From Macrostomum lignano (lineage: Eukaryota): a stretch of 64,000 nt of DNA. This document shows, piece after piece, positions 27,046 to 50,082 of this stretch. The notes under the pieces are model-generated. The model saw only the letters and a list, made by a program, of their open reading frames with translations, was not told where the DNA came from and made no database searches. Every line of letters begins with the position of its first letter. Within the stretch, counting starts at the first letter, position 1. The position numbers and the translations under genes were made by a program. The stretch is taken from assembly GCA_002269645.1 (NCBI GenBank), contig NIVC01001749.1, forward strand, positions 12,968 to 76,967. Reading direction: 5' to 3'.

Positions 27046-30000
27046 ATGCAAGAATTGGAGGACTCATTCTGCTTAGCTCAGACACTGGGACCACCAACCG
27101 TTCAGCTGCAGTCTGCAGACTCAAGCAATCAAGCTACTGAGCAGCTTGCACCGCAGATTCCGCTCACACTGTGCCAGCGCTTGAAGCTCAGTCTAGATAG
27201 TGGCGAATTCTCCGATGTAGCCTTTCTAATTGGCGATGCTAAAATCCGATTCAATGCTCACCGTGTTGTACTAGCATCTGTCAGTCCAGTGTTCCGAGCT
27301 ATGTTCAATAGCCCATTGAGTCGGCAGCTGCAGAGTCTAGATTCTAATCACAATAGCAAACTTATGACTGAAGCTATCCACGAGCTATCTGATATTGAGT
27401 CCAGCGCCTTTGAGAATCTATTAATATTTGCTTATACAGACTGTACAGAAGGTGTTACCGATAGCAACGTATTTCAAACGCTGTACGCCGCTAAGAAATA
27501 TCTTGTTGATGGTCTTGCTAACGCTTGCTGCGAGTACTTGCGTCAGCATTTAACTGTGGATAATGCGCTTACAGTGCTGGAGCATTGTATGTTTCTACAG
27601 GTGCGAAAAAGTGCAGTGAAAAATTACGCCAGGTCCTGAAACAGCGGAGCACCATCTTTAAATCCTAAAACCTGGCAGCACCAAATTTTAATCCCAAAAT
27701 AAAACAAGGAGGCACCACCTTTCAGATCCTGAGACAGGGATGCACCACCTTTCAGATCCTGAGACAGGGATGCACCACCTTTCAGATCCTGAGACAGGGA
27801 TGCACCACCTTTCAGATCCTGAGACAGGGATGCACCACCTTTCAGATCCTGAGACAGGGATGCACCACCTTTCAGATCCTGAGACAGGGATGCACCACCT
27901 TTCAGATCCTGAGACAGGGATGCACCACCTTTCAGATCCTGAGACAGAGAAGCAGCACCTTCAGATCCTGAAGTATGGAATTTCCATTTATTATGTCAAA
28001 ATAGTGAGTGAAAATCACTTCAGATTCTAAAATTAGGAATAACCACTCTGGATTATAAACAGAGTATTCTATTTAAATCCTAAATAGGAACGAATTGGTT
28101 CACTTTGCATTTATCAATCAATAAATATTTCACTGTCCAGGTGCCTTCAGTTGTGCAACCATGTCTCCGTTTAATTTGTCACCAATGGGAACGAATCAGT
28201 TCGGATCTGCTCGGTTGCCATGGAAACACGTATTCTCAAGATTTGATTGCCTGCGTTCTGTCCCAGGATGGTCTGCCATGCGACGAGGTGGAAATATTTG
28301 ATTGGATTTTATGCTGGGCAAAGTCTCGTAAAAGTGCTAATGCTGATGCTGATGAAGAGGATAAACCGTCTGGTTCAATGTCATCATTGGGGACTGTCGG
28401 GGATTTAATCGATTATACACCGTTGCTACGATGCGTTAGATTTTCAAGAATGTCGCGACGCCAGATTGGCAGTCTAGTGGCGCCTACCGGGCTATTGACT
28501 GATGGACAATTGGTCAGAATTCTGACAGGACAGGACAGGGATAATCTAGGTGAGAGTGTGGCCTTGAATATTTATCTTGATCTCTAGCGGCACTCTGGGT
28601 GCCAGTGCATTGATCTCTAGTGGCACTTTTTGGGCCAGTGTATTGATCTCTAGTGGCACTTTTGTGCCAGTGCATTGATCTCTAGTGGCACTTTTGTGCC
28701 AGTGTATTGATCTCTAGTGGCACTTTTGTGCCAGTGTATTGATCTCTAGTAGCACTTTTGGGCCAGTGTATTGATCTCTAGTGGCACTTTTGGGCCAGTG
28801 TATTGATCTCTAGTGGCACTTTTGCTGTCAGTGCATTGATGTCTAATGGCAATTGATTGCCAGTCTCTTGTTCTCAAATGGCACTTTTAATGCTAGTGTA
28901 TTGATCTCTAATGGCATATTTGATGTATAGTGGCAGCTCAATTTACTATCTCTCACACCTTCAGACCGAGACACCGTCGTTGAATTCAACGCTCAGCCGC
29001 GGTGCCCAAGCCTTCCTGGCGAACCCGAACAGCTGGTTCTGTGCGATCTGGCCGCGGCCGCCGCCGCTGTACGCGCTGCCGCTGCACCCTCCCAGGTGTC
29101 GGCCAGGTTGCCCATGGCCCTGCCGCCGTCAGTGACAGACGAATCGTCTTCGGCGTCCACGTTTGTGTCAGCATCCGGTCTGCTGAGCTTAGGTAATTGG
29201 CCCATTGTAGCTCAGGGTGAGACTGTGTGGTAGTGAGGGGGTAAAAGGAGAGAGTGAAAGAGTGGTTGAAAATGGAGTGAAACTCCGAAAATTTGAGACT
29301 GAGAGAGTGACACTGAGAGTGAGATTGAGTGAGTGACACTGCGAGAGTGAGAGAGTGACACTGTGAGAGTGAGATTGAGAGAGTGACACTGCGAGAGTGA
29401 GAGAGTGACACTGCGAGAGTGAGAGAGTGACACTGTGAGAGTAAGAGAGTGACACTGTGATGGTGAGATTGAGAGAGTGACACTGCGAGAGTGAGAGTGA
29501 CACCGTAAGAGTAAGAGAGTGACACTGTGAGGGTGAGAAAGTGACAATGTGAGAGTGAGAGAGTGACACTGCGAGAGTGAGAGAGTGACACTGTGAGAGT
29601 AAGAGTGACAATGAGAGTGAGAGAGTGACACTATGAGAGTGAGAGAGTGACACTGAGAGTGAGAGAGTGACACTGCGAGAGTGAGAGAGTGACACTGTGA
29701 GAGTGAGATTGAGAGAGTGACACTGCGAGAGTAAGAGTGACAATGAGAGTGAGAGAGTGATACTGTGAGAGTAAGAGAGTGACACTGTGATGGTGAGATT
29801 AAGAGAGTAACACTGCGAGAGTGAGAGTGACACCGTAAGAGTAAGAGAATGACACTGTGAGGGTGAGAAAGTGACACTGTGAGGGTGAGAAAGTGACACT
29901 GTGAGGGTGAGATAGTGACACTGTGAGAGTGAGAGAGTGACACTGCGAGAGTGTGAGAGTGACACTGTGAGAGTGAGAGAGTGACACTGCGGGAGTGAGA

Positions 30001-32712: not shown

Positions 32713-32884
32713 TATCTAAATGATGGTTCCATTTCTAAACTATGCTGCAATAGACGATATTAGTAGTATATATACAAGCTCTACAATCGCACCTCTACGC
32801 GTCTTCCTGTCTCGCCGAAACTACAACGACAGCAGCAGCGGCGGCAGCGGCAGCAACGAAGAGGACAGCAATAATAAAGGCGGA

Positions 32885-35800
32885 ATGCGGCCGCCACCGC
32901 CTCAGCCGCAGCAGCGGCTTCGTCCAACCTCGGCAATCACGGTGGTTCAAGCACCGTCGGCATCTTCAGCGGCTGCCTCCAGCTCGCGCGGCCAGCAGCA
33001 GCAGCCGCCGCCACGCTCGCCTTCGTCTGCGTCGTCCTACTCTGAGGGTGAGGAGCGCCAGCCGGAGCCGATTCTTGTGCGCAGCGACGACAACTCCGAG
33101 TCTCCCCGATCCAGCCGGTCATCATCTGCATCGTCCGGTTCGGCCGCGTCCTCTGAGCAGCAGCAGCAGTCCTCTTCTCGACGCCAGAAGCACCGGCGCG
33201 ACTCAAAGCGACGTCACGAGCGATCGCGCCGGCGTCAGGAGCAGCGCGGCGGCGGCGAAGCGCAACGTCGGAGCGACATCGGCAGTCGCGATCGTCAGGG
33301 GCATCGGTCGCGCGACCGGCGTCGGGACCATCGAGATCGCGATCGGGACTCCAGAACGTCCAGAGACAGTCGGAAGCGTCGGCATGGAAGGTCCCCAGCT
33401 CGATCCCCGTCGCCATCGGCAAAGCAGTCTCGTCCTTCGGCGTCGTCCGCCGAGCGTCAAGAGGAGGCGATGCGCCGACGATTAGAATTGAAAATCCGCG
33501 AGAAAGAGCGCTTAGAAAAGCAGCAGAGAAAGCAACAACAACAACAGCAGAAGCAGAAATTCGATGAACAGGCCAACGAGGACGACGATGTTGATGTCGG
33601 CAATTCGCCAATGGTGTCGATTGAGGAGCCGCCTCGGTCGGCAGGCAATGCAAATCATCCCACAGCCATCGCCAGCTCCCCATCGAACTCTTCAGTAGCT
33701 TCATCCAAATCCTCCGCTGGAGCGGGCTCATCCTCGCCAAGAGAGTCGCCTACTAAGCAGAAGCAGCCAGAACAACAGCAGGAGCAGAAAGAGGCGGAGC
33801 CGCCGAAGCCGCCCCGTCGAGTTTACCTGCCGGCTATCCAGGGCTGCCGCAATGTGGAAGAGTACCACTGCCTCAACCGCATCGAGGAAGGCACCTACGG
33901 CGTTGTTTACCGAGCCTGCGACAAAAAGACCAAAGAAATTGTTGCTTTGAAACGATTAAAAATGGAGAACGAACGCGAAGGCTTTCCCATTACATCGTTG
34001 CGCGAGATTAACACCCTGTTGAAAGCTCAACATGAAAATATTGTTACTGTCAGGGAGATTGTGGTTGGCAGCAATATGGATAAGATCTACATTGTCATGG
34101 ACTATGTTGCCCACGATCTCAAATCGCTGATGGAAATTATGACTAAACCGTTCAAGGTAAATGATAGACTCATCTGCCCCCTTATACAGACTGATCCGCC
34201 CTCTTACACTGACTCATCCGCCCTTTTTTACAGACTCATCCGCTCCCTTATACTGACTCATCCGCCCCCTTATACAGACTCATCCGCCCCCTTATACTGA
34301 CTCATCCGCCCCCTTATACTGACTCATCCGCCCCCTTATACAGACTCATCCGCCGCCTTATACAGACTCATCCGCCCCCTTATACTGACTCATCCGCCCC
34401 CTTATACTGACTCATCCGCCCCCTTATACTGACTCATCCGCCCCCTTATACTGACTCATCCGCCCCCTTATACAGACTCATCCGCCCCCTTATACAGACT
34501 CATCCGCCCCCTTATACAGACTCATCCGCCCCCTTATACAGACTCATCCGCCCCCTTATACAGACTCATCCGTCCCCTTATACTGACTCATCCGTCCCTT
34601 ATACAGACTCATCCGTCCCCTTATACTGACTCATCCGTCCCTTATACAGACTCATCCACTACCCTTATACTGACTCATCCGCCCCCTTATACTGACTCAT
34701 CCGCCCTCTAACACAGACTCATCCGTCCTCTAACACAGACTCATCCGCCCTCTAACACAGACTCATCCGTCCTCTAACACAGACTCATCCGCCCTCTAAC
34801 ACAGACTCATCCGTCCTCTAACACAGACTCATCCGCCCTCTAACACAGACTCATCCGTCCTCTAACACAGACTCATCCGCTCCTTACAGACTCATCCGCC
34901 CCCTTACACAGACACAGCCGCCCCTCACCGTAGTCTTATCCACCCCTAGTTACAAAGGCATTCTCTCTGTCCCAATGGTGATAGTATACACCGCCTGCGC
35001 CCCGCAGATCGAGGAGGTGAAATGCCTGATGCTGCAGCTCCTTCGCGCCGTGGCTCACCTGCACGATAATTGGATTCTGCATCGTGATTTGAAAACCTCC
35101 AATCTGCTGCTCAGCCATCAGGGCATATTGAAAGTCGGCGATTTCGGCCTTGCTCGCGAGTACGGCAGCCCATTGAAAAAGTACACCACCGTTGTGGTGA
35201 CCCTGTGGTATCGCTCAGTTGAGCTGCTGCTGGGCACTAAGCTCTACAGCACACCCATCGACTGCTGGAGCGTTGGCTGCATATTTGGCGAACTGCTGCT
35301 CAAAGAGCCGCTATTCCGGGGCAAAGGCGAGATCGAACAGCTCAAACTGATATTCCGCGAGCTCGGCCGGCCGACGGAGAAGATCTGGCCGGATCTGCTG
35401 CAGCTGGCAGCGGCTAAACGGTTACTGGTTGAACAACCGCTATTTGACGGAGATGAATACCGGTTTAACCGGTTGAAAAACCGGTTCCCGGCTGACAGGA
35501 TGTCCGACGCCGCTTTCGGCCTTATCAACGGCCTGCTGACATTCGATCCGAGCAGGCGGCTCACGGCTGAACAGGCGCTGAAGCACGAGTACTTTAGCGA
35601 GCGCCCGGCCGCGATTGACCCGTCCCTGTTCCCCACCTGGCCGGCCAGGTCCGAGGGTCATCGGGCCGGAGCGTCGCACGGGCATCAGCAAAGTCAGCAG
35701 CAGCAGAACCGGCACAGTCCCAAGCCGCCGTCCGGTGGCAAGGCCTATTCTCGGCTAATCCGCGGCGGAGATGGCGACATTTTTAATAGCGGTGTAGCCG

Positions 35801-35955
35801 CCGATACGGCTAATCCGCCTGCGGCTCCTTCGGCTGCTGTTGCCGCTGCGGCTGCCGCAGCTGCCGCGGTTAGCGCTAAACTGCCTCCGCCGCCGGCGCA
35901 GTCTCAGCCACAGCCGCAGTTGCCGCCGGGTTTTAATTTGCGAGGCGGATTTTAA
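32885..35955 (+). CDS. CDK11: Cyclin-dependent kinase 11 (PITSLRE)
   Basis: Exon 1 ends at 34156 (RS/RD-rich N-terminus; IEEGTYGVVYRA; GFPITSLREINTLLK). Exon 2 is 35008-35955 (HRDLKTSNLL, DFGLAREYGSP, VVTLWYR). Phase-0 GT-AG intron. The ORF is open from 32720; MRPPPP at 32885 is the preferred start. Confidence 0.95.
34175..34915. repeat. Intronic minisatellite, 22-24-bp unit (GACTCATCCGCCCCCTTATACT)
   Basis: About 32 copies filling the CDK11 intron. Confidence 0.96.
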
Positions 35956-36999: not shown

Positions 37000-38110
37000 T
37001 TAGTTCAATCTGACTGCTATTAGCATCCACTATAAGTAGTATATAGCTCAGTGCAAGCATTTTAAATAGGATTCATTTTTATTAAGTTCGCGCAGACACA
37101 AATCTGCAACAAAAAAACTTGGAACAGACAGACAAGCAAGAAAAAAACCATTAATTTGTGGCGCATTTTAAATCATTAATTTCAGTGTGTTTCCTCTGAC
37201 CAACTATAATATTATTAGTAGGAGATATTTTAAATTAATTGGAAGATCAAACAAGACAATAGAAAGATTTTATTCATTCAATTCCAATCCATTATCAAGT
37301 TAATAATTGAATCAAACTTGACACCTGACAATACTCAGTCATAATAATAATTACGACAAAAAATTAATTTACTATGAAACTTGAGTAGTCTCAAGCAATG
37401 CTTAATATAATGTAACAACTAGTATATCAGGTAAATGAAAAGGAACATTAGTTAAGTCCTTACGCTACAAAAATAAGTTATTTTCAAGCCAAGAAAAAAA
37501 AACAAAAGAGCAGCGAGAGAAAAATTACTTTAGAAACATTAATATAATATTTATACTACATTAATCCTGCACCCCCGGAAACACACACAAAACGAACTCG
37601 CGAACAACACTTGTAACAAATTGAGACCAAAAACACAAGTCTTAGATATCTTTTATTCGAATCCAACAGAACACCAAAACGTAACAGCAGCAAAATATGT
37701 CAAATTATAACGAGAATAAATAATAACAATAATTAAAATATATAATTACTGAGTATGACGGGCACGCAGGAAATTTGAAAGCAAGAAAAACAAATTTATA
37801 TCTTAAAGAATCCATACTAAAATTTATATAATTGTCGCTTCCACTATTAATTTATTTAGGAAATTTACTATTTCATTGCTATACATTTTATAGCGTATTT
37901 TCTGTCAGTAGACCTATAAGTAGGATAATCATCACATGTATATCTTAATTTAATTGTGGAAATGAAAATTACGGGCGGAAATTTGGGGTTAGAAAATTAT
38001 AATAGAATAATAATAGATCAAGGAGCATGAGTCACAATAATGAGGATTTGGATACGGGGTCAGCCAGCCAGCAACACAAAAAACTCTACTTTTCAGTTCA
38101 GAGTTTGAGC

Positions 38111-41100
38111 TCAATCGTGCAGCGTGGCCGTGGATTCCAGGGTGCCCACAAAAGTCCGCGTCGCCTCGCGTTGACTGCCGTCGGCGTGTTCGTCGTACCA
38201 GTTTTTGAATGACTCCTCTGACACCAGACGGTTGTCAAGAAAGACTGTGAATACTTCTGGCAGCAGTTCTGCCAGTGCGGAGTTTTGGTTGCGCGATTGA
38301 GAATCGAGTGCACTTGGCTAAGATTTAATAGACTTTTAATTCAATTTAACAGTGGAGGGCAGCGGCTGTCACTGAACTGAAGGGGCCTCAGGGGGGGCAG
38401 CGGCTGTCACTGAACTGAAGGGGCCTCAGGGGGGCAGCGGCTGTCACTGAACTGAAGGGGCCTCGGGGGGGGGGGGGCAGCGGCTGTCACTGAACTGAAG
38501 GGGGCTCGGGGGGCAGCGGCTGTCACTGAACTGAAGGGGCCTCGGGGGGGGGGGCAGCGGCTGTCACTGAACTGAAGGGGCCTGGGGGGGGGTGCAGCGG
38601 CTGTCACTGGAACTGAAGGGGCCTCGGGGGGGGGGGCAGCGGCTGTCACTGAACTGAAGGGGCCTCAGGGGGGCAGCAGCTAATCTGACTCACCAACAGA
38701 CGAGCCGTCAACCAGACAAGCGGCCGTCGCCTTCAGCGACCAGATCTCCTGGGAGAAGCCTTCAACAAACTGTTGCAACACCGAGCAGAGCCGCTTTAAC
38801 AGGCCAGCGTCTAGTTGGCCGGCGCACAGACAGGCGCCGCAGACGCCGCGCATCAGCTCCCGGTTGAAGGCTTCGCAGTCCCTGTCGGCCCTGGCGACTC
38901 CCCTTTCCAGCAGGTCGATGACCGACTCAGCCAGTTTGTCGGCGTCGCCTTCGGGCAGGCCGGCCCGGACAACTTCTTGAACTCGTCCGGCCAGGCGTTC
39001 GAAACTGAGCCGAGAGGCGGCCGAGTCCGGATCGGGCAGCGGGGACTCGGTGAACTCCAGCTCCTTGCTGGTGACAAACGCGGCGGCCGATTCGGCGGAC
39101 GTCTCCAGCACGGTCGGCCAGCAGACGCCGGCGTCGCGGAAATCTTGGCCAACCCGTTCGTGGCCGAGCCGGACGCTGGCCAGATGAGCGGCACGGGAGA
39201 GAATTTCGCCGCGTAGAGGCGACTTTTTGCCGCCAGCAAAGCAGAGAATGTCGGAGGGGATCAGCATCACCAGGCGGAGTACGCAGTCCAAATAGCTGGC
39301 AGATTTTTGCAGGAAAGAGGAAAATATTTCGCCCAGGTAGGAGCCGAGCAGAGGGAAGTCTGACTGCATGTCCTCGGCGTTCTCCATTAAATTGGAGAAG
39401 CTGCGGGATGTGGAGTAAGGGATAGGAATGTAATTAAAGGTAGATACATAGACAGACACTAAAACACACAGACAGATACTTAGACACTAAAGCAGAGACA
39501 GACAGACAATGACAACAGACAGACACTAATGCAGACAGACAGACAGACACGCAGAGTAGCACACGGGAGAACAATATTAAGTGTAGCTCCCAACCTAAAT
39601 CCCAGCAAGCAAAGCGCACCTGCTGAGACTCAAACAGGAGAGCCAGCTCATGCTGCTGTCAGCAATCGCCTGTAGGAGAGCTCGCAAATTGTTTCATTTA
39701 TCTGCGGTCTCGCTGGTGGCATTGCAAAGCCTGTGCAGACTACTTAGCTAAACATGAGTCAGTAGCATATGTGGCATATTCTACCTAAATCCCGGCAGAT
39801 AGCGGTGAGAACTGCAGAGACTCAAACAGAAAGCCTGATAAATTTGATTTAGCAAGACGTTTAGGAGAGATTGTCGCAAATGTGTTCAGACTGGCTCAGC
39901 CAGCCTTTCCCTTGGGTGTTGGGAAAAGCAACCGAACCGGTCAGAAGTTGCGCTTTCGCTGGTTCGTCTTGCAAAATTTTTACACGCATTAGGAATCCTA
40001 ATTGCATTGAGACGCCTACTTATTTGTTTTGGTCGAACTTAACAGAACTGTATTAGCATGAGTTGAATGCACTTCATTTCAGGTCAAACTGCTTTGCTGA
40101 TTGTGCTATCAATTTTATTAAGCGGGTAACGCTTAAACAACGAGATGTCACGGTACAAGTTGCCAAAAAGCCGTCAAAGTCTAATAGTCAATTTGAAGCG
40201 TTTTATTGTTTGCGACTCTGAAACGACTCTGGAGCCGTAGAGTCGTATTTGAGGCGTGCTATAGTTGCTATAGAGTCACATCTTTTAGCGAAATTTTAGC
40301 GCCAACACAACGGTCTTTGGACGACTCCTTTTATACGATTCTGCAACTCGCGTGACGCAATAGTCGCCTCCCTGTCGCATTTGAGCGGCTTTGAGTCGTT
40401 CGATTCTGGTCACGGTATCGTTTTCTAGGGGTCCTCCAACTCACTACTACTCATACAGCACACGCCAATAGTCCCTAATTTTATCGCAACACTCCAAAAA
40501 GCAAACATCACCACACGCAAAGTGTAGATTTAATAACAAACGAACCCGTCAATAACAGTCCGAATATCGATAAGCCGACAATCCAACAACTCGAAGAACA
40601 GCCGACCGCCTTTTTCGCGCAATTCTTTACTATTAGCGTTGAGCAAATGCTCGGCATTGATGTCAACAAACACTTTCAAATGCGGATGCGAGGCAATCTC
40701 TTGGAAGCAGGATTTAGTCTCGTCTAGAGAGATAACGCCGGCGAGCCACTCTTCCATAATGTTCTTAGATTTGCGGCCAAGAGCCTCTTTGTCGAGAATG
40801 TTGGCAGTAGCCGAGGCCGAAGCGCCCAGGCGGGACGGCAACTCGTGAGTGGACATGGACCGGTGCATGCCGACCAAGGGAGCAGCTGACAATGCTGTCA
40901 CGGCTTTGGGCGCTGGTCCGGGGGTCTGCTGTCTGGCTAGCTGGGACTGTTGAACTGGCTGCTGCTGGTCGCGGGTGCTGTGCGGCGAGCCTTCGCGACT
41001 GGCACCCCGGCTGCCGCTCGACTCGCGACTGTTGTTCCGGCGCCCGCCGGCGCCTCCGCTGACGCCGCCAGTCAGACTGAAAAGGATGAACAGGAAAAAT

Positions 41101-42783
41101 TATAATGGATACATAAAAACTAGCAGAACTGTACATTCAGAGACTGAAAGACAATGACTGGACACTAGGAAAGGCACACAAACGTCTAGACACAAGGCAC
41201 AGACGGACAGACACTAAGACACCCAGACACTAATACAGACAGACAGTCAGTCAGACAGACAGTCAGACAGACAGACAGACAGACAATGACAACAGACAGA
41301 CGGACAATGACAACAGACAGAGACAGACAGACAATGACAACAGACAGAAAGACAGACAGACAGTCAATGATAACAGACAGACACTAATGCAGACAGATAG
41401 ACAGACATACAATGACAACAGACAACGACAACAGACAGACACTAATGCAGACAGACAGACAGACACGCAGAGTAGCACACGGGAGAACAATATTAAGTGT
41501 AGCTCCCAACCTAAATCCCAGCAAGCAAAGCGCACCTGCTGAGACTCAAACAGGAGAGCCAGCTCATGCTGCTGTCAGCAATCGCCTGTAGGAGAGCTCG
41601 CAAATTGTTTCATTTATCTGCGGTCTCGCTGGTGGCATTGCAAAGCCTGTGCAGACTACTTAGCTAAACATGAGTCAGTAGCATATGTGGCATATTCTAC
41701 CTAAATCCCGGCAGATAGCGGTGAGAACTGCAGAGACTCAAACAGAAAGCCTGATAAATTTGATTTAGCAAGACGTTTAGGAGAGATTGTCGCAAATGTG
41801 TTCAGACTGGCTCAGCCATCCTTTCCCTTGGGTGTTGGGAAAAGCAACCGAACTGGTCAGAAGTTGCGCTTTCGCTGGTTCGTCTTGCACTTTGGGGATC
41901 TCTATCTCTTCAACAACAAGGCTGACTCACCGCTGTAAAGCTGGTGATCGGCCCGCGCCAGCGCCGGCGCCAGCTCCGCGCGCCCGACTAATACTCGGCC
42001 GGGACGGTCCAAGCCGCATAGGAGCGGAGCCGCCGCTGCCACCGAGACCGCCGCTAGCTGACGCGTCGCCAGCAATGCCGGAAGACTCGCCACTATCCAG
42101 AATCAGCTTCCTAGTGTCCATCTTCTGCTGGCGCCGACTATTAGCCACCACTGGGGTCCATTCAGCGTCAGCCGATGTTGGCGGCAGCAGAGCTGAGTTG
42201 CCCGGCGACGCCGGCGGCCTGCCGTAGTTGCCGCGGCCGCCGCGACCGCCTCCTCCGCCTCCTCCGCCGCCAATGTTGCTAGCAGCCATGGCACGCCTGG
42301 CCTCCTCTTCGCGCTCCTTCTGTTCCAGCTCCTCCTTGGTCATGGGTCGCTCCTGAAGCCGGCGCTCCATTTCGCGCAGCTCCCAGCCGCGTTCGCGCAT
42401 TTCAACAACGTCGATTAGTTTAAATCGGACCTTGGATTCGATGCTTTTATCGGCTATGATCTTTTTAATCTGACCGAACGAAGCGTCCAACTGGGTGGAC
42501 TCGTTCTGCTTGCGATTTCCTGTCGGCGTTTCTAGTTTCTTACCAACAGTACGCAACAGCTCGCACAGGCATTCCAGCGATTCGACTAGAGTGCCTCGAC
42601 TGTTGCTCTTTGAAGGCTGATGACAGCTAAGGAGGGCTGTTATACAGCTGTAGATTATATTAGCCGTCAGCACGCCTTTCATGTAGAGTTCGCCAATGAA
42701 TCTGAAATAGTTGACGAAAGCGTGAAAAATTATAGTTAACTAGGATCGCGACGGTAGTAGTAGTAGCAGTTTTAGTAGTAGTA

Positions 42784-42829
<46 letters not shown>

Positions 42830-45800
42830 CAGTAGTGGTAGTAGTAGTAGTAGTAGTAGTAGCAGTAGTAGTAGTAGTAGTAGCAGTAGTAGTAGTAGCA
42901 GTAGTAGTATGAATAGTAGTAGTAGTTTCAGTAGCAGTAGCAGCAGTGGAACAGTATATTACCAAGTGAATATAGATGCATTAGTATGTAGCTGCATATT
43001 ACCTGTGCAGTATTACATAGCATTAGTAATTCCTATATATTAGCGTGACAAGCAGTAAAAACAGTGCGCAATTAACGACACGCTCGCCTGATTAAGAGAT
43101 TAAAAAGGAATCATGATCTGCCAAACAAACCAGGGAGCCAAAAATGGAAAAAAACAGAAATACTTTGCTGCCATAAAGACCTAGAATAATACCGCATGTA
43201 GCATGTCTCTACACAATCAGAGCTTGTAGAGCGCGCATCCTCAGGCTGTTGGCATACTATTACTATACACTAATTAGAGTCAGTTAGCTGGGCGGAAACA
43301 CTAATAACTCAGTGTACTACAGTCCTAGAGCTAGGAAACACGAACTGTAGCAATTTATAAGACCTAGCTACGCAGATTACGGGCTGCCAGAATTGAAATT
43401 GTTTGCAATTATTTTTAGCTTACCGAATATTTCCATAGTATTGATCCTTCACTTTCTTCACTTGTTCCTCTTTTTCTTCTTCTAACGATTTTTTCTTGTC
43501 TTCTTTCTCCTCCTTGCTAATAATTTGATCCCAATAATCGGCTTTAGTCTCCATCTGGTCTAATAGAGGAGTTTCGAACATTAATTGGCACTTTTTCAAC
43601 AGCAGCGAGCGGTGCGTGATGCACTTGTCGGGCAAAGTCTTGTCCGTGTTCACTTTTAACTGCAATAGGATTGCGAGGGTTGAGGTTTGCGAGGGTTGAG
43701 GTTTGTGAAGGTTGAGGTTTGTGAAGGTTGAGGTTTGTGAAGGTTGAGGTTTGTGAAGGTTGCGGTTTGCGAGGGTTGAGGTTTGCGAGGGTTGAGGTTT
43801 GTGAAGGTTGAGGTTTGTGAAGGTTGAGGTTTGTGAAGGTTGAGGTTTGTGAAGGTTGCGGTTTGTGAAGGTTGCGGTTTGCGAGGGTTGAGGTTTGTGA
43901 AGGTTCAGGTTTGCGAAGGTTCAGGTTTGCGAGGGTTGAGGTTTTCGAAGGTTGAGGTTGGTGAAGATTGAGTGTTGTGAGACAGGATTTGTGAAATCAG
44001 ATGCTAGTGTTTGTAACTAACGCTTAATTCGTATTCAACTCGAAATTAGTAACATACTTAATTACGACAAATTCATTCTATCAATAGTTTAAAAGACGCA
44101 GAATGAAAATTGAACCAACTTGAAGAAAGTCTGATCACCGCCCACGCAAAAACATTCGTCAATATGCATCCAACATAAGTGCATGAGGAAACTAGACAAC
44201 GTATTGAATAGGAACTTTGTTCGTGCGTACAACAGTTGTCAAGTTTTTATCTTACAATATTATCATGCAATACTTTCTTACAAGTTTTAGAAAACACCAG
44301 AAAAACATTTATAGTTGGCTGGGTTTAACAGTGAAGAGAGAAGTAACTGCTGCAACATTGAACAGTGCAGCGTTGCGCCCACCCGCCCCAGAACAGAGGC
44401 CAATATATAGATAAGCTTGATTAGAATCGGGCATATGGTGGGACAGGAGACAGAGAGACACAGAGACAAAAAAAGACGAAGTGGGCTTACAGAGTGGACA
44501 CGCGGGGTTTGCAACAGAGAAAGACTGGCAGTCATATAGCCGCGTGCCGCATACATACTTGGCCTCAGCTTGTCTATACAAGAGAATAGCAACAAAAGCT
44601 GTCAACAGCGCTTAAACTCGACCCAGCTGTGTGTACCGTAACTGTGTACCCTTAATTATATCTGCACATCATGCATAATGCCAATAGAGTCCTAACGTAT
44701 TAGCTAATGTTTACATTGTGCAGCATGCATAAATCCCAACTTACAAACGATAACCGCTTGCAGATCTCGGCAAACACAGACGAATAAGAGGTCTCTCGGG
44801 TGGCCTGCAAAAAAAGAAGAAGAGAGTTCCGGTTGTGTCAGTTTAAACATTATATTAAAACAACTTTTATTAACTCCGCTAGCGTTAGGAATGTAAAGAG
44901 CATGTTTAAGAGGTTTTTTCTAAATTCACGCTAACAATATTTCGGTCAGTCTGTTAGCGATTTGTTAAACCAGTCTAATAATACTGGCATAGATAAACCA
45001 AACAGGGTTTTGACCCTAAAGCCAATTAAAGCACAGCCAGGCAGCAGGACACATCATTTTATGCCTATACGCTGGCGAAGCATTAAATTTTGCTAGTCCA
45101 AAACAAATCAAATCAACAAAAAGGAAGACAAGCGACAGAAAGGTGAATGAAAGCGGAACAGGACAGACAGACAGGCAATGCAACTTGACCGATCTAGTCT
45201 GAGGACACACGTTTGGAGTTGCCTTTCCTATCGGTGAGGAACTCAGCTAACAGCTATTATCGATTTTTCCGCTCAAACCTAAACGGAATTGTGTGCTTTG
45301 CTTTTTTTATTAATTTGAGTCGCCATGCTTGACTGGGAAGGACTCCGTCACGCCAGATTTATAGACGGAATGTGCAGATTTTGCTAACAATACCGAAAAA
45401 GGCTTAACAAAACATTCAGACAATTATTTCAAAGTTACCATTTTGTTATGATTTGACTACACGATTTTTTGTGTAAGACAGGGATAACAATCATCATTGT
45501 TTTGTTGGCCTTCTTCTTTGCACAACCACTGCTTTGCAAATGAGAAATGGGTATCTGGGAGGCTGGCCCAGCAACTGAGGATCTGGGAGGCTGGCCCAGC
45601 AACTGGGGATCTGGGAGGCTGGCTCAGCAACTGAGGATCTGGGAGGCTGGCCCGGAAACTGGGGATCTGGGAGGCTGGCTCAGCAACTGAGGATCTGAGA
45701 GGCGGCCCAGCAACTGGGGATCTGAGAGGCTGGCCCAGCAACTGAGGATCTGAGGGGCTGGCTCAGAAACTGAGGATCTGGGAGGCTGGCTGGCCCAGCA

Positions 45801-48789
45801 ACTGGGGATCTGAGGGGCTGGCCCAGAAACTGAGGATCTGGGAGGCTGGCATTTCATAATCTAGATGTGAAAAAAATGACCCCAAAAACGGAGCAACAAA
45901 TAGCAATTAACAATAAGCAAGCACCTTTTCAAACATGATATCCACGCAGCACTTCAGACCGTCCTCGGTGCCAATATCGCACTTGGTCAGCTGTTGAAAG
46001 CAGGATTCGAAATTCTGCGGCGTCACCTTGTTCAAGATGGATCGAATGCTGCGCTCGATATCCTGCCGCCTATCAGTATCCGGGTCGTCAGTTTTCTTTT
46101 GCAAAAAGCCAGGCACGTAGGCGTTATCAGTGTGATGCAGGTCCACTTTTTCGCGGCTTCGAACTTCAATAACCATCTGCTTCGGCTGTTGATGCTGCTG
46201 TCTAGGCGTGTTGCCGCGACTAATCTGCTGTTGTTGCTGCTGCTGCTGTTGCCTAGGAAATGCGCCCGATTTGCTTTTATCCTTAGGCGTAGCCATGTGG
46301 CTAGGAACCGATTGCACGTAGGTAGGCATGAAGTTAACGCCTTGAATGCGTTGCTTGAAATGAGAAATTTGGGGGGGGGGTTGCTATGCATTGGTTAGCT
46401 GAAGTCATTAACAATTGTTTAGATGCTCCACGCACTCTATATGCTTGCAGTTTGAAGGCTCAGTAGCGTTTCTGAATCTCTCATGTGCATATCAGACTGC
46501 GGATATCATCATTGCCGATCAAAACTATAAATCAAATTTTACAAACTAGTTAATTTCTCCATATAATATATAGTACTCATGGCTCAGTAGCGTTTCTGAT
46601 TCATCATTTTTATTGATTAATCCGATCGCATGTGTCATCATAGCCGTGGAGATCATTGCTATTTGTATACATTAGGACAACTGTGCAACTGGCATGATGC
46701 ACACTAAATGCTCATACTGCACATAAACAGAGAGTGGCACAGCTAGCACATGAAGTGGCACAGCTAGCACACAAAGTGGCACAGCTAGCACACAAAGTGG
46801 CACGGCTAGCACATGAAGTGGCACAGCTAGCACATGAAGTGGCACAGCTAGCACAGAAAGTGGCACAGCTAGCACACAAAGTGGCACAGCTAGCACACAA
46901 AGTGGCACAGATAGCACACAAAGTGGCACAGCTAGCACATGAAGTGGCACAGCTAGCACATGAAGTGGCACAGCTAGCACATGAAGTGGCACAGCTAGCA
47001 CATGAAGTGGCACAGCTAGCACACAAAGTGGCACAGCTAGCACATGAAGTGGCACAGCTAGCACACAAAGTGGCACAGCTAGCACATGAAGTGGCACAGC
47101 TAGCACACAAAGTGGCACAGATAGCACACAAAGTGGCACAGATAGCACACAAAGTGGCACAGATAACACACAAAGTGGCACAGCAAGCACACAAAGTGGC
47201 ACACCAAGCACTAAAAAAATGGCGCTCCCTACACGCCAACCCTATTAGAAAGAACTTGACCCACCAATCAGTGCCATAAAAAATAATAAGCACAAAGTTG
47301 AATTACTGGTACTTACCACTTCGGTCTTTCGCAACAGTTCAGGAATATCGCAGGGCAGTGTACTAGGCTTCTGGGTAGATAATTGAGCATCCTGCAGTTT
47401 AAGCAGAAAATCTCTATCGTAAGTCTTTTTACGTTCAAGCGTAACTTTGTCCGATTCGCCTTTCTCAGGCTTGAATTCGTATTTTGGCGCTTTGCTAGCG
47501 GCTCCGGCGCCGCCTGAAGATGAAGCGTCAGCGCCAGCAGCAGCTGAACCGGCATTTCCAGCCTCAGCCAGAGAAGTCAACTGATTGTGACTGTGACTGT
47601 GATGCAGCACACTGACCGCATCGACTGACTGACTGCGCAGAGTCGTGGGCGCCGGTCTCAACATATCGGCATCAAATTTAGGCAGTCGTTCGCCAACTTC
47701 ATCTTTGACGCTTTCAGCTTCAGTAACCGGCGTGTCGGTTTTTCCAGCCTCATCCTTGACAACAGTGCCAGCATTGGCTGCCTCTGGATTTGGCGGCGAA
47801 GTTTTGCCATCTTTAGCCGAACGAACCTGGGCTAGCATGTCTTTTTGCACTACATAACGCTGCTCCTGTTCGCCTTTGTTATTCGCGGCGTCGCTTTGCT
47901 GCTGTTGCTGCTGCTGCTGCGGCTGAGGCGTGACTTGCTGCTGCTGCTGGGGCTGCGGCTGCTGCTGCTGGGGCTGGGGCTGCTGCTGCTGGGGCGGCGG
48001 CTGCTGCTGCTGCGGCTGAGTGGGCTGTTTCGGTTTCAACTCAATTGCAGAATTAGTCCTCGGATCAATAAATGTTAGTATCTTCTTTTGTGTTACATCC
48101 GGCTGCTGCGGTTGCTGCTGGTTAGCTTGCTGTTGGGACTGCTGCTGCTGCTGTTGATGTCGCTGCTGCTGATGCTGCTGTTGCTGCTGATGCTGAGGCG
48201 GCGGCGGCAGCAGCGGCTGCGGCTGAGTAGAGGCCAGCGGAGGAATATTATAAGCGCCAGCATGGCTGGCATGGGGAGCGTACATTGGGGCTGGGTGCTG
48301 CTGATGAGCGGCTGGCACGTAGGCAGGCTGGGCGCCGTACATAGCGTGAGGCGGCTGCTGATAGTACATAGCCGGAGCCCCTGGCGGTGCAGCTCCAATC
48401 ATGTGCTGCTGATGCGCGTGCGGATGGTGCTGGGGGCCGAACTGGTGCCCAGCCGGGAGGCCCTGCGCTGCGCCAGCCGACGTTGCCGGCCAGCCAGGCT
48501 GACCGTAGGGCGGCTTCAGTGGTTGAATAAAGTAAATACATTAGATTAGACTAGCATAGAAATCTTAATAACTGATAGGTACGAGTTCAAAAAATACCAA
48601 GCCGCATTGGCTGTCTTGCTAACAATTAAAAACCTTTTGGTGTATTGATGTTTTGCTTCGTTGGCATTAGATATAAATAGATAGATAGATAGATAGATAG
48701 ATAGATGGATAGATAGATGGAAAGATGGATAGATAGATAGATAGATGGATAGATAGATAGATAGAGAGATAGATAGATGGAAAGATAGA

Positions 48790-48873
<84 letters not shown>

Positions 48874-50082
48874 TGAGGTTCCAGATATACGAATAGCCAG
48901 GATGTGTTTAGTCTAGATGCATATTTAATGGCTTTAAAAATTCTCGCTAACTGTTCAAATATAACTAAGACAGCAGTTGTCAATTTAAAAAAAAATGTAT
49001 AGAGCAAAGCAAACACAAATTTGAAGCAGACGAAAAAGCGTACATCCACCTACATAGCATATAACTTGCTGGGTAACATCAGCTAATGCGAAAGACACAG
49101 ACAACAATTTGCGTGCAGCGCTTCCAACCAATTAACCTCTATAGCTGGTTAGTAATTCCTTTAATAAAGTCGTAAGGAATAAAAGCTCTGGTAGCAATGG
49201 AAGCTTAAAATGATTTTTAACTGAAATACAACTTTGCTATTATAGGTCTAGAAGCATACAAGCTCACCAATACTGTACGCAGGCACGCACTCATACTCCA
49301 AACTCTAGTCGAAAATTCACGCGTGAAACATAGTATTCCCCATGTTCAATTAGATATTTATTAAAATTTTGGCTACAATTGTACACAATTCAACACAATA
49401 TGAATTAGTAATAACAAAACTAAACATATACGACAATATATAAATAAACATTATAACCACCTGATGCAATGGAGCACACATCTGCAATAGAGATAGGCGT
49501 ACAATAAGAATAAAGAGGATTAAGTTAACGGCTTAAGATACGCGGGTGTTAAATGCTTAGTGAAAATATGCAAATAGAAAATATAATTTTACCCAAACTA
49601 GACAAGCTGCAGTCACCTTGGCCATTATTACTGTTTAAATCAACTATAAAACTAGTAGATAATAACTGCACCGAGTCTATTGCAATCATTTGGCTTACCA
49701 CAATGGGCACGGGCACGCCACCCGGTTGCATTGCCTGATAGTACATAGCAGGCGCAGGATTCACTGGATTGCCACTAGAAGCATAGGATTGCGCTGGCAA
49801 ATTATTTGGCAAATTGGCATTAGCTCCTTGCTGCTGATGATGCTGATGGTTTCCATGGTGCTGCATTCTGTGACCATTGCCTCGGTAATTGTTATTGTAG
49901 CTTGGCCTGCCACCCCGGTTACCGCCGTGATTATAGCCGCCATTGTAGGCCTATGGGATTAAAGAGAGATTTAAAAGATATTTAAGTCATCGAACATCAT
50001 TATACATGCTATATTATTAGCAGTATTATCATAATAAAACTCAATATTATTAACTTACAACATTTGCTTGTCCATGATCCAT
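38111..50082 (-). CDS. EIF4G: Eukaryotic translation initiation factor 4 gamma (4E-binding motif, MIF4G, MA3, W2)
   Basis: Phase-consistent exons (minus): 50059-50082(-50105), 49699-49950, 47317-48513 (YDRDFLL = YxxxxLphi), 45925-46353 (IRSILNKVTPQNF), 44745-44804 (ATRETSYSSVFAEICKRL), 43424-43659 (HRSLLLKKCQLMFE), 41931-42701 (FIGELY...KVRFKLIDVVEMR), 40546-41076 and 38694-39400 (MA3: AEDMQSDFP), 38111-38268 (W2: VFTVFLDNRLVSEESFKNW...TGA). Start codon uncertain. Confidence 0.93.
38355..38680. repeat. Intronic minisatellite, about 38-42-bp unit (GGGGCAGCGGCTGTCACTGAACTGAAGGGGCCTCAGGG)
   Basis: About 8 copies with variable G-run length. Confidence 0.94.
39511..39973. repeat. 463-bp intronic element, copy 1
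   Basis: Direct repeat of 41427-41889; I found 2 mismatches by eye. Confidence 0.93.
41427..41889. repeat. 463-bp intronic element, copy 2
   Basis: Direct repeat of 39511-39973, flanked by a GACA-rich microsatellite. Confidence 0.93.
42752..42948. repeat. (TAG)n microsatellite
   Basis: Intronic; source of the poly-Thr pseudo-ORF. Confidence 0.95.
43672..43965. repeat. Intronic minisatellite, 16-bp unit (GTTTGTGAAGGTTGAG)
   Basis: About 18 copies starting next to the acceptor at 43660. Confidence 0.94.
45409..45503 (-). ncRNA. snR38: Box C/D snoRNA, snR38/SNORD1 homologue (guide for LSU Gm2815-equivalent)
   Basis: Minus strand: AAAACA-ATGATGA (C box, 45491-45497) ... GTTATCCCTGT guide (45478-45488) + CTTA (D') ... 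CTGA (D box, 45416-45419)-A-TGTTTT. 6-bp terminal stem. Guide is complementary to the conserved LSU ACAGGGAUAAC. Intronic and sense to eIF4G. Confidence 0.85.
45553..45850. repeat. 28-bp minisatellite, locus 3 of 3
   Basis: Same unit as 21880-22730; about 10 copies in an eIF4G intron. Confidence 0.96.
46457..46516 (-). ncRNA. Box C/D snoRNA candidate B (paralogue of 46578-46648)
   Basis: GGC-A-ATGATGA (C) TATCCGCAGT CTGA (D') ... ATGAGA (C') ... TCAGAAACGCTA CTGA (D) GCC. All four boxes plus a terminal stem. Confidence 0.75.
46578..46648 (-). ncRNA. Box C/D snoRNA candidate A
   Basis: GGC-T-ATGATGA (C) ... CGGA (possible D') ... ATGATGA (C') A-TCAGAAACGCTA CTGA (D) GCC. Same 12-nt guide as candidate B. 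Confidence 0.75.
46730..47205. repeat. Intronic minisatellite, 21-bp unit (AAGTGGCACAGCTAGCACACA)
   Basis: About 22 copies; source of the VAQLAHK pseudo-ORF. Confidence 0.96.
48675..48872. repeat. Compound (GATA)n(GACA)n microsatellite
   Basis: Read directly from the sequence. Confidence 0.96.

What the first reader, a model, noticed from the sequence alone, without database searches (positions are those of the whole stretch)
46457..46648. Tandem pair of paralogous C/D snoRNAs in one intron with a guide to an apparently non-standard 28S site
Seen: two 60-70-nt C/D units about 60 nt apart, sense to eIF4G, with different internal sequence but an identical 12-nt D guide TCAGAAACGCTA and GGC/GCC closing stems. 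Known: the complement UAGCGUUUCUGA matches 11/12 to yeast 25S U865-A876 (UAGCGGUUCUGA, recalled), the region holding Gm867 (snR50) and Am876 (snR72). The +5 rule points to the G869 equivalent, which I do not know as a methylated site. Unit B has a second guide TATCCGCAGT at a canonical D' (target ACUGCGGAUA, loosely like 18S nt ~95-105). Inference: a new snoRNA family, processed from a polycistronic intron rather than one snoRNA per intron.
Basis: partly seen in the sequence, partly recalled or inferred. Interest (0 to 1): 0.75.

Follow-up and report, generated by a model that had tools for sequence, protein, structure and literature searches.

The report
Two intronic C/D snoRNAs in eIF4G
Two small, textbook-looking box C/D guide RNAs sit side by side in one intron of an animal's eIF4G gene and share a guide that fits a conserved hairpin of large-subunit ribosomal RNA; this is an ordinary kind of gene, with a probably lineage-specific methylation target that could not be confirmed because the species' own rRNA was not available.

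Summary
On the minus strand there are two compact box C/D units: 46645-46581 (65 nt) and 46516-46457 (60 nt). Each has AUGAUGA, CUGA and a GGC/GCC stem. They are 64 nt apart in one predicted 963-nt intron of an eIF4G-type gene, in sense orientation. Boxes, stem and the 12-nt D guide UCAGAAACGCUA are identical. The D' guides (5/10) and the middle have diverged, which argues for selection on the D guide.

The guide matches the Rfam eukaryotic LSU consensus UAGCGaUUCUGA at 11/12. The one mismatch falls on a weakly conserved column. Seven metagenomic eukaryotic LSU contigs carry U there and give a perfect 12-bp duplex. The +5 rule points to the conserved G two nt 3' of yeast Gm867. That site is not listed as methylated in Drosophila or Arabidopsis.

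No Rfam family reaches threshold. A third C/D candidate, snR38/SNORD1-like, lies in the next intron.

Not supported: the 18S target proposed for the D' guide. Not shown: expression, the species' own rRNA sequence, and conservation in relatives. Two snoRNAs in one intron is uncommon in animals but known (Drosophila, plants).

Verdict: probably new members of a known class; modest interest.

The parts
46581..46645 (-). Unit A, box C/D snoRNA candidate (65 nt). 5' stem GGC 46645-46643; C box AUGAUGA 46641-46635; D' guide CACAUGCGAU 46634-46625; degenerate D' CGGA 46624-46621; canonical C' UGAUGA 46606-46601; D guide UCAGAAACGCUA 46599-46588; D box CUGA 46587-46584; 3' stem GCC 46583-46581.
   Evidence: Direct reading; strict C/D scan hit; weak Rfam snoU54 hit, 20.7 bits against a gathering score of 35.
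46457..46516 (-). Unit B, box C/D snoRNA candidate (60 nt). 5' stem GGC 46516-46514; C box AUGAUGA 46512-46506; D' guide UAUCCGCAGU 46505-46496; canonical D' CUGA 46495-46492; degenerate C' UGAGAG 46483-46478; D guide UCAGAAACGCUA 46475-46464; D box CUGA 46463-46460; 3' stem GCC 46459-46457. A possible 5-bp external stem UUUGA/UCAAA lies in the flanks.
   Evidence: Direct reading; strict C/D scan hit; weak Rfam snoU54 hit, 20.6 bits.
46517..46580 (-). 64-nt A+U-rich spacer (20% G+C) between the two units. A cut inside it would be needed to release both RNAs from one intron.
   Evidence: The need for cleavage is inferred.
46354..47316 (-). Predicted host intron (963 nt). Donor GUG|GUAAGU at 47317/47316; acceptor C10-AAAUUUCUCAUUUCAAG|CAA at 46354/46353; phase 0 on both sides; CUAAC branch-point-like motif near 46394. 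It also holds a 21-bp minisatellite. Unit B ends 102 nt and unit A 226 nt upstream of the 3' splice site.
   Evidence: Reading frames and splice motifs; tandem repeat at 46733-47211. There is no transcript evidence.
47317..48540 (-). Upstream eIF4G exon (the 5' limit is approximate). It is Q/P-rich and ends with the eIF4E-binding motif KKTYDRDFLLKLQ.
45925..46353 (-). Downstream eIF4G exon, carrying the start of the MIF4G domain. Its donor is GAAAAG|GUGCUU at 45925/45924.
45406..45506 (-). Third C/D candidate ('C3') in the next intron of the same gene. It has a 9-bp terminal stem AACAAAACA/UGUUUUGUU, C box AUGAUGA 45497-45491 and D box CUGA 45419-45416. The guide GUUAUCCCUGU directly follows the C box and is followed by a degenerate D' CUUA. 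The RNA is snR38/SNORD1-like.
   Evidence: The same guide string occurs in the Drosophila snR38:54E copies assigned to 28S-Gm3348.

Best explanation
The two units are paralogous intron-encoded box C/D snoRNAs produced by a local tandem duplication of about 125 nt. Both are transcribed as part of the eIF4G pre-mRNA. Both assemble on their C/D kink-turn with the core proteins (Snu13/15.5K, Nop56, Nop58, fibrillarin). They are then released from the spliced intron by exonucleolytic trimming plus at least one cut in the A+U-rich spacer. Their shared D guide UCAGAAACGCUA pairs with 5'-UAGCGUUUCUGA-3' in the 5' strand of a conserved domain II hairpin of LSU rRNA, the one that carries Gm867 and Am876 in yeast. 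Fibrillarin then 2'-O-methylates the G paired to the fifth guide nucleotide upstream of the D box. That G is Rfam RF02543 model position 882, the yeast G869 equivalent. This reading predicts that this species has U at the neighbouring variable position (model position 883).

Shown: the anatomy, the paralogy, the pattern of conservation, and the complementarity to real eukaryotic LSU sequences. Inferred: expression, snoRNP assembly, the processing route, the species' own rRNA sequence and the methylation itself.
For: Both units have canonical C and D boxes and a closing stem, are 60-65 nt long, and are compact with 10-14-nt guide spaces.

Stem, C box, D box and the 12-nt D guide are 100% identical between the units. 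The D' guide is 5/10 identical, the middle needs a 5-nt indel, and the flanks are only loosely alignable. With roughly 55% neutral identity, 12 identical guide positions have a chance of order 1e-3, which points to selection on the guide.

The guide matches the Rfam eukaryotic LSU consensus CGuAgcGaUuCUGACG at 11/12. The single difference is at a lower-case, weakly conserved column. Seven metagenomic contigs carry UAGCGUUUCUGACGUGCAAAUC. All are eukaryotic LSU rRNA by Rfam and fall into at least three sequence types. The duplex with them is 12 bp of perfect Watson-Crick pairing, at -17.8 kcal/mol against about -13.5 for the A or G variants. A random 12-mer matches about 5.6 kb of rRNA with at most 1 mismatch with probability about 0.012.

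The units are sense-intronic in a translation-factor gene. Human EIF4G1 likewise hosts SNORD66. The next intron holds a snR38-like C/D RNA whose guide is identical to that of the Drosophila snR38 copies, so this gene looks like a genuine snoRNA host.
Against: The species' own LSU rRNA could not be obtained. If it has A or G at model position 883, there is a mismatch directly next to the target nucleotide, which normally blocks methylation.

The U variant looks rare: 7 contigs in the whole metagenome collection. No Nm is listed at this site in Drosophila or Arabidopsis; that yeast and human also lack one there is from memory.

There is no Rfam family hit, and no homologue was found in any other sequence. 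The only somewhat related eIF4G locus, L008, has none. There are no expression data.

The terminal stem is only 3 bp. The box pattern alone is not very improbable.
Confidence: 0.6

Rival explanations
1. The units are genuine, expressed C/D snoRNAs, but the conserved D guide has a different or additional target: another RNA such as an snRNA, a tRNA, a pre-rRNA spacer or an mRNA. Alternatively it binds the LSU hairpin across a mismatch and acts as a folding chaperone without methylating.
For: The species' rRNA is unknown, and the eukaryotic consensus gives only 11/12 with the mismatch next to the target nucleotide. The site is unmethylated in the model organisms checked. The D' guides match nothing in the LSU/5.8S contigs at 9 nt or more, so orphan guides are already present in these RNAs.
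Against: An 11/12 match to a universally conserved rRNA segment, with the mismatch exactly at a column where the needed base occurs in nature, is unlikely by chance (about 1% or less). I found no better candidate among the snRNA sequences I could recall (memory only, not a test).
Confidence: 0.25
2. The units are not functional. They would be a chance or decaying arrangement, for example relics of a duplicated snoRNA or a repeat-associated sequence in a repeat-rich intron, that is not stably expressed.
For: The intron and the whole window are full of minisatellites. The strict C/D pattern arises about once per window by chance. The stem is only 3 bp. There is no conservation or expression evidence.
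Against: Both copies keep every functional element intact (C, D, stem, guide) while the rest has diverged. Relics would decay evenly. Both are in sense orientation in an intron of a gene that also hosts a snR38-like snoRNA, and the guide is complementary to rRNA.
Confidence: 0.1
3. The units are divergent members of the snR50 lineage, the guide for yeast Gm867, and actually methylate the Gm867-equivalent rather than the G two nucleotides downstream.
For: They target the same hairpin and overlap the duplex that an snR50-type guide must form. Yeast Gm867 lies 2 nt 5' of the predicted site (plus recalled numbering).
Against: The D box CUGA is unambiguous and is followed directly by the GCC stem, so the fifth paired nucleotide is fixed. 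Reaching the Gm867-equivalent would need position 3. There is no Rfam hit to any snR50-type model at E up to 10.
Confidence: 0.05

Closest known systems
Box C/D snoRNAs that guide rRNA 2'-O-methylation (general class; compact intronic type)
   Same: C box AUGAUGA, D box CUGA, terminal stem, internal D'/C' boxes and a 12-nt antisense element ending at the D box. Sense-intronic position in a translation-related host gene.
   Different: No curated Rfam family reaches threshold. The predicted target nucleotide is not a known Nm site in the yeast, human, Drosophila or Arabidopsis maps.
Yeast snR50 (25S Gm867) and snR72 (25S Am876); Arabidopsis SnoR72Y (25S A885)
   Same: They act on the same conserved LSU domain II hairpin (CGUAGCGNUUCUGACGUGCAAAUCG).
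   Different: The register differs: the predicted site here lies 2 nt 3' of Gm867 and 7 nt 5' of Am876. No sequence homology was detected.
Rfam snoU54 (RF01277), the best sub-threshold hit
   Same: Similar size and boxes, and a shared ACGCUA string before the D box.
   Different: The score is 20.6-20.7 bits against a gathering score of 35. The U54 guide carries 2 extra nt before the D box and targets 18S (AAUAGCGUAUA). Only 6-7 nt of that 18S site match the guide here.
Intronic snoRNA clusters (Drosophila, mainly H/ACA; rice and Arabidopsis C/D clusters)
   Same: More than one snoRNA in a single intron, separated by short A/U-rich spacers.
   Different: The common pattern in animals, as described for vertebrates and Bombyx, is one snoRNA per intron. 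Here two C/D paralogues share one intron, but only by splice-site prediction.
Human SNORD66 in EIF4G1 (and, from memory, SNORD97 in EIF4G2)
   Same: An eIF4G gene serves as host for an intronic C/D snoRNA.
   Different: The guide and target differ (SNORD66 targets 18S C1272). There is no evidence of orthology.

Membership tests
Box C/D snoRNA | C box RUGAUGA near the 5' end and D box CUGA near the 3' end | tested here: met
   AUGAUGA and CUGA are present in both units.
Box C/D snoRNA | Terminal 5'/3' stem that brings C and D together (kink-turn) | tested here: met
   GGC/GCC stem, 3 bp, in both units. Unit B has an additional possible 5-bp external stem. The stem is short but within the usual range.
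Box C/D snoRNA | Internal D' and C' boxes | tested here: met
   Unit A: D' CGGA (degenerate), C' UGAUGA (canonical). Unit B: D' CUGA (canonical), C' UGAGAG (degenerate). Degenerate internal boxes are usual in the class.
Box C/D snoRNA | Antisense element of at least 10 nt directly upstream of D or D', complementary to the organism's rRNA or snRNA | tested here: inconclusive
   12/12 to seven natural eukaryotic LSU rRNAs and 11/12 to the Rfam LSU consensus. The organism's own rRNA was not available.
Box C/D snoRNA | Stable 60-300-nt RNA bound by fibrillarin, Nop56, Nop58 and Snu13 | not testable with these tools
   No expression or binding data are available.
Box C/D snoRNA | Conservation of boxes and guide in related species | tested here: inconclusive
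   The two paralogues conserve exactly these elements. No orthologue could be fetched: the best eIF4G relative is 47% identical over 39% of the query, and its locus L008 has no homologue.
Rfam snoU54 (RF01277) | Score at or above the family gathering threshold, and the U54 target (18S) | tested here: not met
   20.6-20.7 bits against 35. The guide register and target differ.
snR50-type guide (yeast 25S Gm867 equivalent) | Target nucleotide at the fifth paired position is the Gm867 equivalent | tested here: not met
   The fifth position pairs with the G two nt downstream. Yeast numbering is recalled and is consistent with Gm867/Am876.
Intronic snoRNA cluster (two or more snoRNAs in one intron) | Both snoRNAs lie between one donor and one acceptor of the host pre-mRNA | tested here: inconclusive
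   A GUAAGU donor at 47316 and a polypyrimidine-AG acceptor at 46354 keep the frame. There is no cDNA to exclude a small exon in between.

The most novel reading that the evidence does not exclude
A lineage-specific 2'-O-methylation in this conserved LSU hairpin that co-evolved with an rRNA substitution. The rRNA would have changed A/G to U at RF02543 position 883, and a duplicated pair of snoRNAs would track that change, giving a clean natural example of guide-target co-evolution. A further reading is that two C/D snoRNPs assembling in one intron of eIF4G feed back on the splicing or expression of this translation factor.
Probability: 0.12. Interest if true: 0.5.

Novelty: new member of a known kind. 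Interest (0 to 1): 0.3.

Why it matters
If real, these RNAs add one methylation site, probably lineage-specific, to a conserved LSU hairpin that already carries Gm867 and Am876 in yeast. They also make a concrete, checkable prediction about one nucleotide of this animal's 28S rRNA. They give another animal example of two C/D snoRNAs in one intron, which requires endonucleolytic release. Species-specific snoRNAs and Nm sites turn up in every newly profiled lineage, so a specialist would find this useful for annotation rather than surprising.

Tried and rejected
Rfam. At gathering thresholds nothing was found in the whole window. Permissive searches of 2 kb and 12.5 kb gave only weak generic C/D hits (snoU54, archaeal sR models) and low-complexity artefacts.

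Literature string searches. I searched for the guide and for the A, G and plant variants of an equivalent guide. There were no hits, but only main texts are searchable.

Species identification. An 85-aa eIF4G exon found nothing. The CDK11 kinase found at most 72% identity, spread evenly over animal phyla. An eIF4G pseudo-protein found only distant hits. So the source is an animal without a close relative in the database, and its rRNA could not be fetched.

Orthologous locus. L008, the best eIF4G relative, has no similar snoRNA.

D' guides. Neither has a complement of 9 nt or more in the seven LSU/5.8S contigs. Both were dropped.

Drosophila Me28S-G1083. I first suspected it was the equivalent site. 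Its guides show that it targets the UAUAGGGGCGAAAG region (the yeast G908 equivalent), so it was rejected.

Other scans. A guide-first scan and a relaxed C/D scan for further snoRNAs gave only chance-level hits apart from A, B and C3. Folding the two-unit region showed no unusual structure (z = 0.33).

Full report
WHAT IS THERE. Read on the minus strand, the flagged stretch holds two compact box C/D units. Unit A is 46645..46581 (65 nt): GGC U AUGAUGA CACAUGCGAU CGGA UUAAUCAAUAAAAAU GAUGAA UCAGAAACGCUA CUGA GCC. Unit B is 46516..46457 (60 nt): GGC A AUGAUGA UAUCCGCAGU CUGA UAUGCACA UGAGAG AU UCAGAAACGCUA CUGA GCC. Each has a perfect C box, a perfect D box and a 3-bp closing stem. One internal box is canonical in each unit (C' in A, D' in B) and the other is degenerate. 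Its upper coordinate is 3 nt too generous.

IS IT MORE THAN CHANCE. The 12-mer guide occurs exactly twice in the window with up to one mismatch allowed, against 0.28 expected. The identical stretch is 19 nt long (guide, D box and stem). A strict C/D pattern scan of both strands of the 64 kb returns only three loci: A, B and a third one 1 kb downstream in the same gene. First-order Markov simulations give 1.05 such loci per window, and 7% of them give three or more. The boxes alone would therefore not be convincing.

The convincing part is the pattern of conservation between the two copies. Stem, C box, D box and D guide are identical. The D' guide keeps 5 of 10 positions. The D'-C' interval needs an indel and is unalignable. 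The flanks align only loosely. With roughly half the neutral positions changed, twelve unchanged guide positions have a probability of order 1e-3. The copies are an old local tandem duplication (period about 125 nt) in which exactly the functional elements of a C/D RNA have been kept.

CONTEXT. The minus strand from about 50.0 kb to 38.1 kb encodes an eIF4G-type protein. It has a Q/P-rich N-terminus and the eIF4E-binding motif KKTYDRDFLLKLQ. It also has a full-length MIF4G domain (93 bits) and weak MA3 and W2 matches in the canonical order.

The exon with the 4E motif ends at 47317, followed by GUAAGU. The next exon starts at 46353, after C10-AAAUUUCUCAUUUCAAG. Both junctions are in phase 0. 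This predicts a 963-nt intron. From 5' to 3' it contains a 21-bp minisatellite of 22.8 copies (46733-47211), unit A, the spacer, unit B, a CUAAC branch-point-like motif and the acceptor. Unit B ends 102 nt upstream of the 3' splice site.

The next intron (donor at 45924) contains the third C/D candidate, C3 (45506-45406). C3 has a 9-bp terminal stem. Directly after its C box it carries the guide GUUAUCCCUGU, followed by a degenerate D' CUUA. This guide is complementary to LSU ACAGGGAUAAC. It is the same string as in the three Drosophila snR38 copies assigned to 28S-Gm3348, which also have a degenerate D'. C3 additionally has a 10-nt stretch, UGGUAACUUU, complementary to the rRNA immediately 5' of that target. 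This resembles the 'extra base-pairing' described for some yeast snoRNAs (from memory).

So this eIF4G gene looks like a real snoRNA host. That has a human precedent in SNORD66 within EIF4G1.

SOURCE ORGANISM. A CDK11/PITSLRE kinase encoded at 32.7-36.0 kb finds at most 72% identity. The hits are spread evenly over vertebrates, mites, molluscs, annelids, cnidarians and Trichoplax. The eIF4G finds only very distant relatives. The window is therefore from an animal without a close relative in the searchable protein collection. Its rRNA could not be retrieved. This is the main limitation of the whole analysis.

TARGET. The complement of the shared guide is UAGCGUUUCUGA. One scan of the metagenome collection with UAGCGUUUCUGACGUGCAAAUC found seven contigs. 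All are eukaryotic LSU rRNA by Rfam. They belong to at least three sequence types, and one has a 5.8S that looks like the animal/protostome type to me (that judgement is from memory). With all seven, both units form a 12-bp perfect Watson-Crick duplex ending at the D box.

The Rfam LSU model aligned to one of these contigs gives the eukaryotic consensus CGuAgcGaUuCUGACGUGCAAAUCG. The guide matches it at 11 of 12 positions. The single difference is at a lower-case, weakly conserved column (model position 883). From memory this base is G in yeast and human and A in Drosophila and plants. The nucleotide paired with the fifth guide position upstream of the D box is the upper-case, conserved G at model position 882.

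In yeast numbering (recalled, and consistent with Gm867 being a G and Am876 an A) this is G869. It lies in the 5' strand of the short hairpin that carries Gm867 (snR50) and Am876 (snR72). Both of those sites are confirmed as yeast modifications.

A random 12-mer has about a 1.2% chance of matching 5.6 kb of rRNA with at most one mismatch, and 0.03% of matching perfectly. The predicted duplex is -17.8 kcal/mol with U, against about -13.5 with A or G.

IS THE SITE KNOWN. The Drosophila RiboMeth-seq table lists no 28S Nm between Am1017 and Gm1108. From the guides printed there, these correspond to yeast A817 and G908. The Arabidopsis table goes from A826 to A885, the yeast A876 equivalent, with nothing between. 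No Drosophila snoRNA contains the equivalent guide. To my knowledge yeast and human also have nothing at this position (memory). So 'non-standard site' is fair. Lineage-specific Nm sites are, however, common.

FAMILY. No Rfam family reaches its gathering score. The best sub-threshold hit for both units is snoU54 at 20.6-20.7 bits against 35. That hit is explained by the boxes plus a shared ACGCUA, in a different register and with an 18S target. String searches of the literature found nothing. The units are therefore unassigned C/D snoRNA candidates. 'New family' is possible but rests on negative evidence only.

D' GUIDES. Unit B's UAUCCGCAGU sits before a canonical CUGA, and unit A's CACAUGCGAU sits before CGGA. 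Neither has a complement of 9 nt or more in the LSU/5.8S contigs. They differ from each other at half their positions. I treat both D' guides as orphan or non-functional.

MECHANISM. The most likely course, inferred from the established biology of intronic C/D snoRNAs, is as follows. Both RNAs are transcribed within the eIF4G pre-mRNA and bind the core proteins on their C/D kink-turn. They are then freed from the excised, debranched intron by exonucleases that stop at the snoRNP boundaries. Because two snoRNPs share one intron, at least one endonucleolytic cut in the A+U-rich spacer is needed, as in plant and Drosophila intronic clusters. The literature describes one snoRNA per intron as the mode in vertebrates and Bombyx, and intronic clusters in Drosophila. 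The mature snoRNPs then pair with nascent LSU rRNA, and fibrillarin methylates the G at model position 882. The duplication may simply raise dosage.

ALTERNATIVES. Three alternatives remain:
- The RNAs are genuine snoRNAs with another target, or they act as a chaperone across a mismatch (0.25).
- The copies are non-functional or decaying (0.10). This is disfavoured because only non-functional parts have decayed.
- The RNAs are snR50-type guides for the Gm867 equivalent (0.05). This is contradicted by the fixed D-box register.

VERDICT. These are very probably two real, paralogous intronic box C/D snoRNAs. Their most likely target is a conserved LSU G that is not methylated in the standard model organisms. 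That target is conditional on this species having U at the adjacent variable base, which is a specific prediction that one look at its rDNA would settle. This is a new member of a known kind, and the interest is modest.

Noticed in passing
window 45406-45506 (-): A third box C/D snoRNA candidate lies in the next eIF4G intron, with a 9-bp terminal stem. Its guide GUUAUCCCUGU is identical to that of the Drosophila snR38:54E copies (28S-Gm3348) and is followed by a degenerate D' (CUUA). A second 10-nt stretch, UGGUAACUUU, is complementary to the rRNA directly 5' of the target, so the two segments together cover 20 contiguous rRNA nucleotides. No Rfam hit.
   Followed up: partly
window 46733-47211: A 21-bp minisatellite (AGTGGCACAGCTAGCACACAA, 22.8 copies, 93% matches) lies inside the same intron as the two snoRNAs. 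Further arrays lie in neighbouring introns and exons of the gene: 45553-45850 (28 bp), 43667-43980 (16 bp), 42754-42926 (GTA), 48673-48874 (ATAG). The whole window is unusually rich in such arrays.
   Followed up: partly
window 32720-35955 (+): A CDK11/PITSLRE-type kinase gene, with an RS/RE-rich N-terminus and the kinase domain split by at least one intron. It is at most 72% identical to any database protein, with hits spread evenly across animal phyla, so the source animal has no close relative in the collection.
   Followed up: partly
window 38100-50000 (-): The eIF4G itself is very divergent. An 85-aa exon found no relatives at all. The conserved MIF4G/MA3 part reaches only 36-47% identity to the best hits (an unnamed ENA metagenome protein, then corals and an anemone). 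Long poly-Q, poly-G and GA-dipeptide tracts interrupt the protein.
   Followed up: partly
L002, L005, L006, L007 (metagenome LSU contigs): Four contigs from four different metagenomes carry one unusual LSU type. Apart from the U at RF02543 position 883, it has compensated changes at the LSU 5' end (ACCCCCUAAAC ... AAGGGGAGG) and GACCAAUCG in place of GACUAAUCG. L002 also has a G+U-rich upstream spacer with no detectable 5.8S within 684 nt. The organism is not identified.
   Followed up: no
window 27046-27639 (+): An ORF with a BTB/POZ-like segment (FSDVAFLIGDAKIRFNAHRVVLASVSPVFRAMF). It was recognised by eye only and not searched.
   Followed up: no
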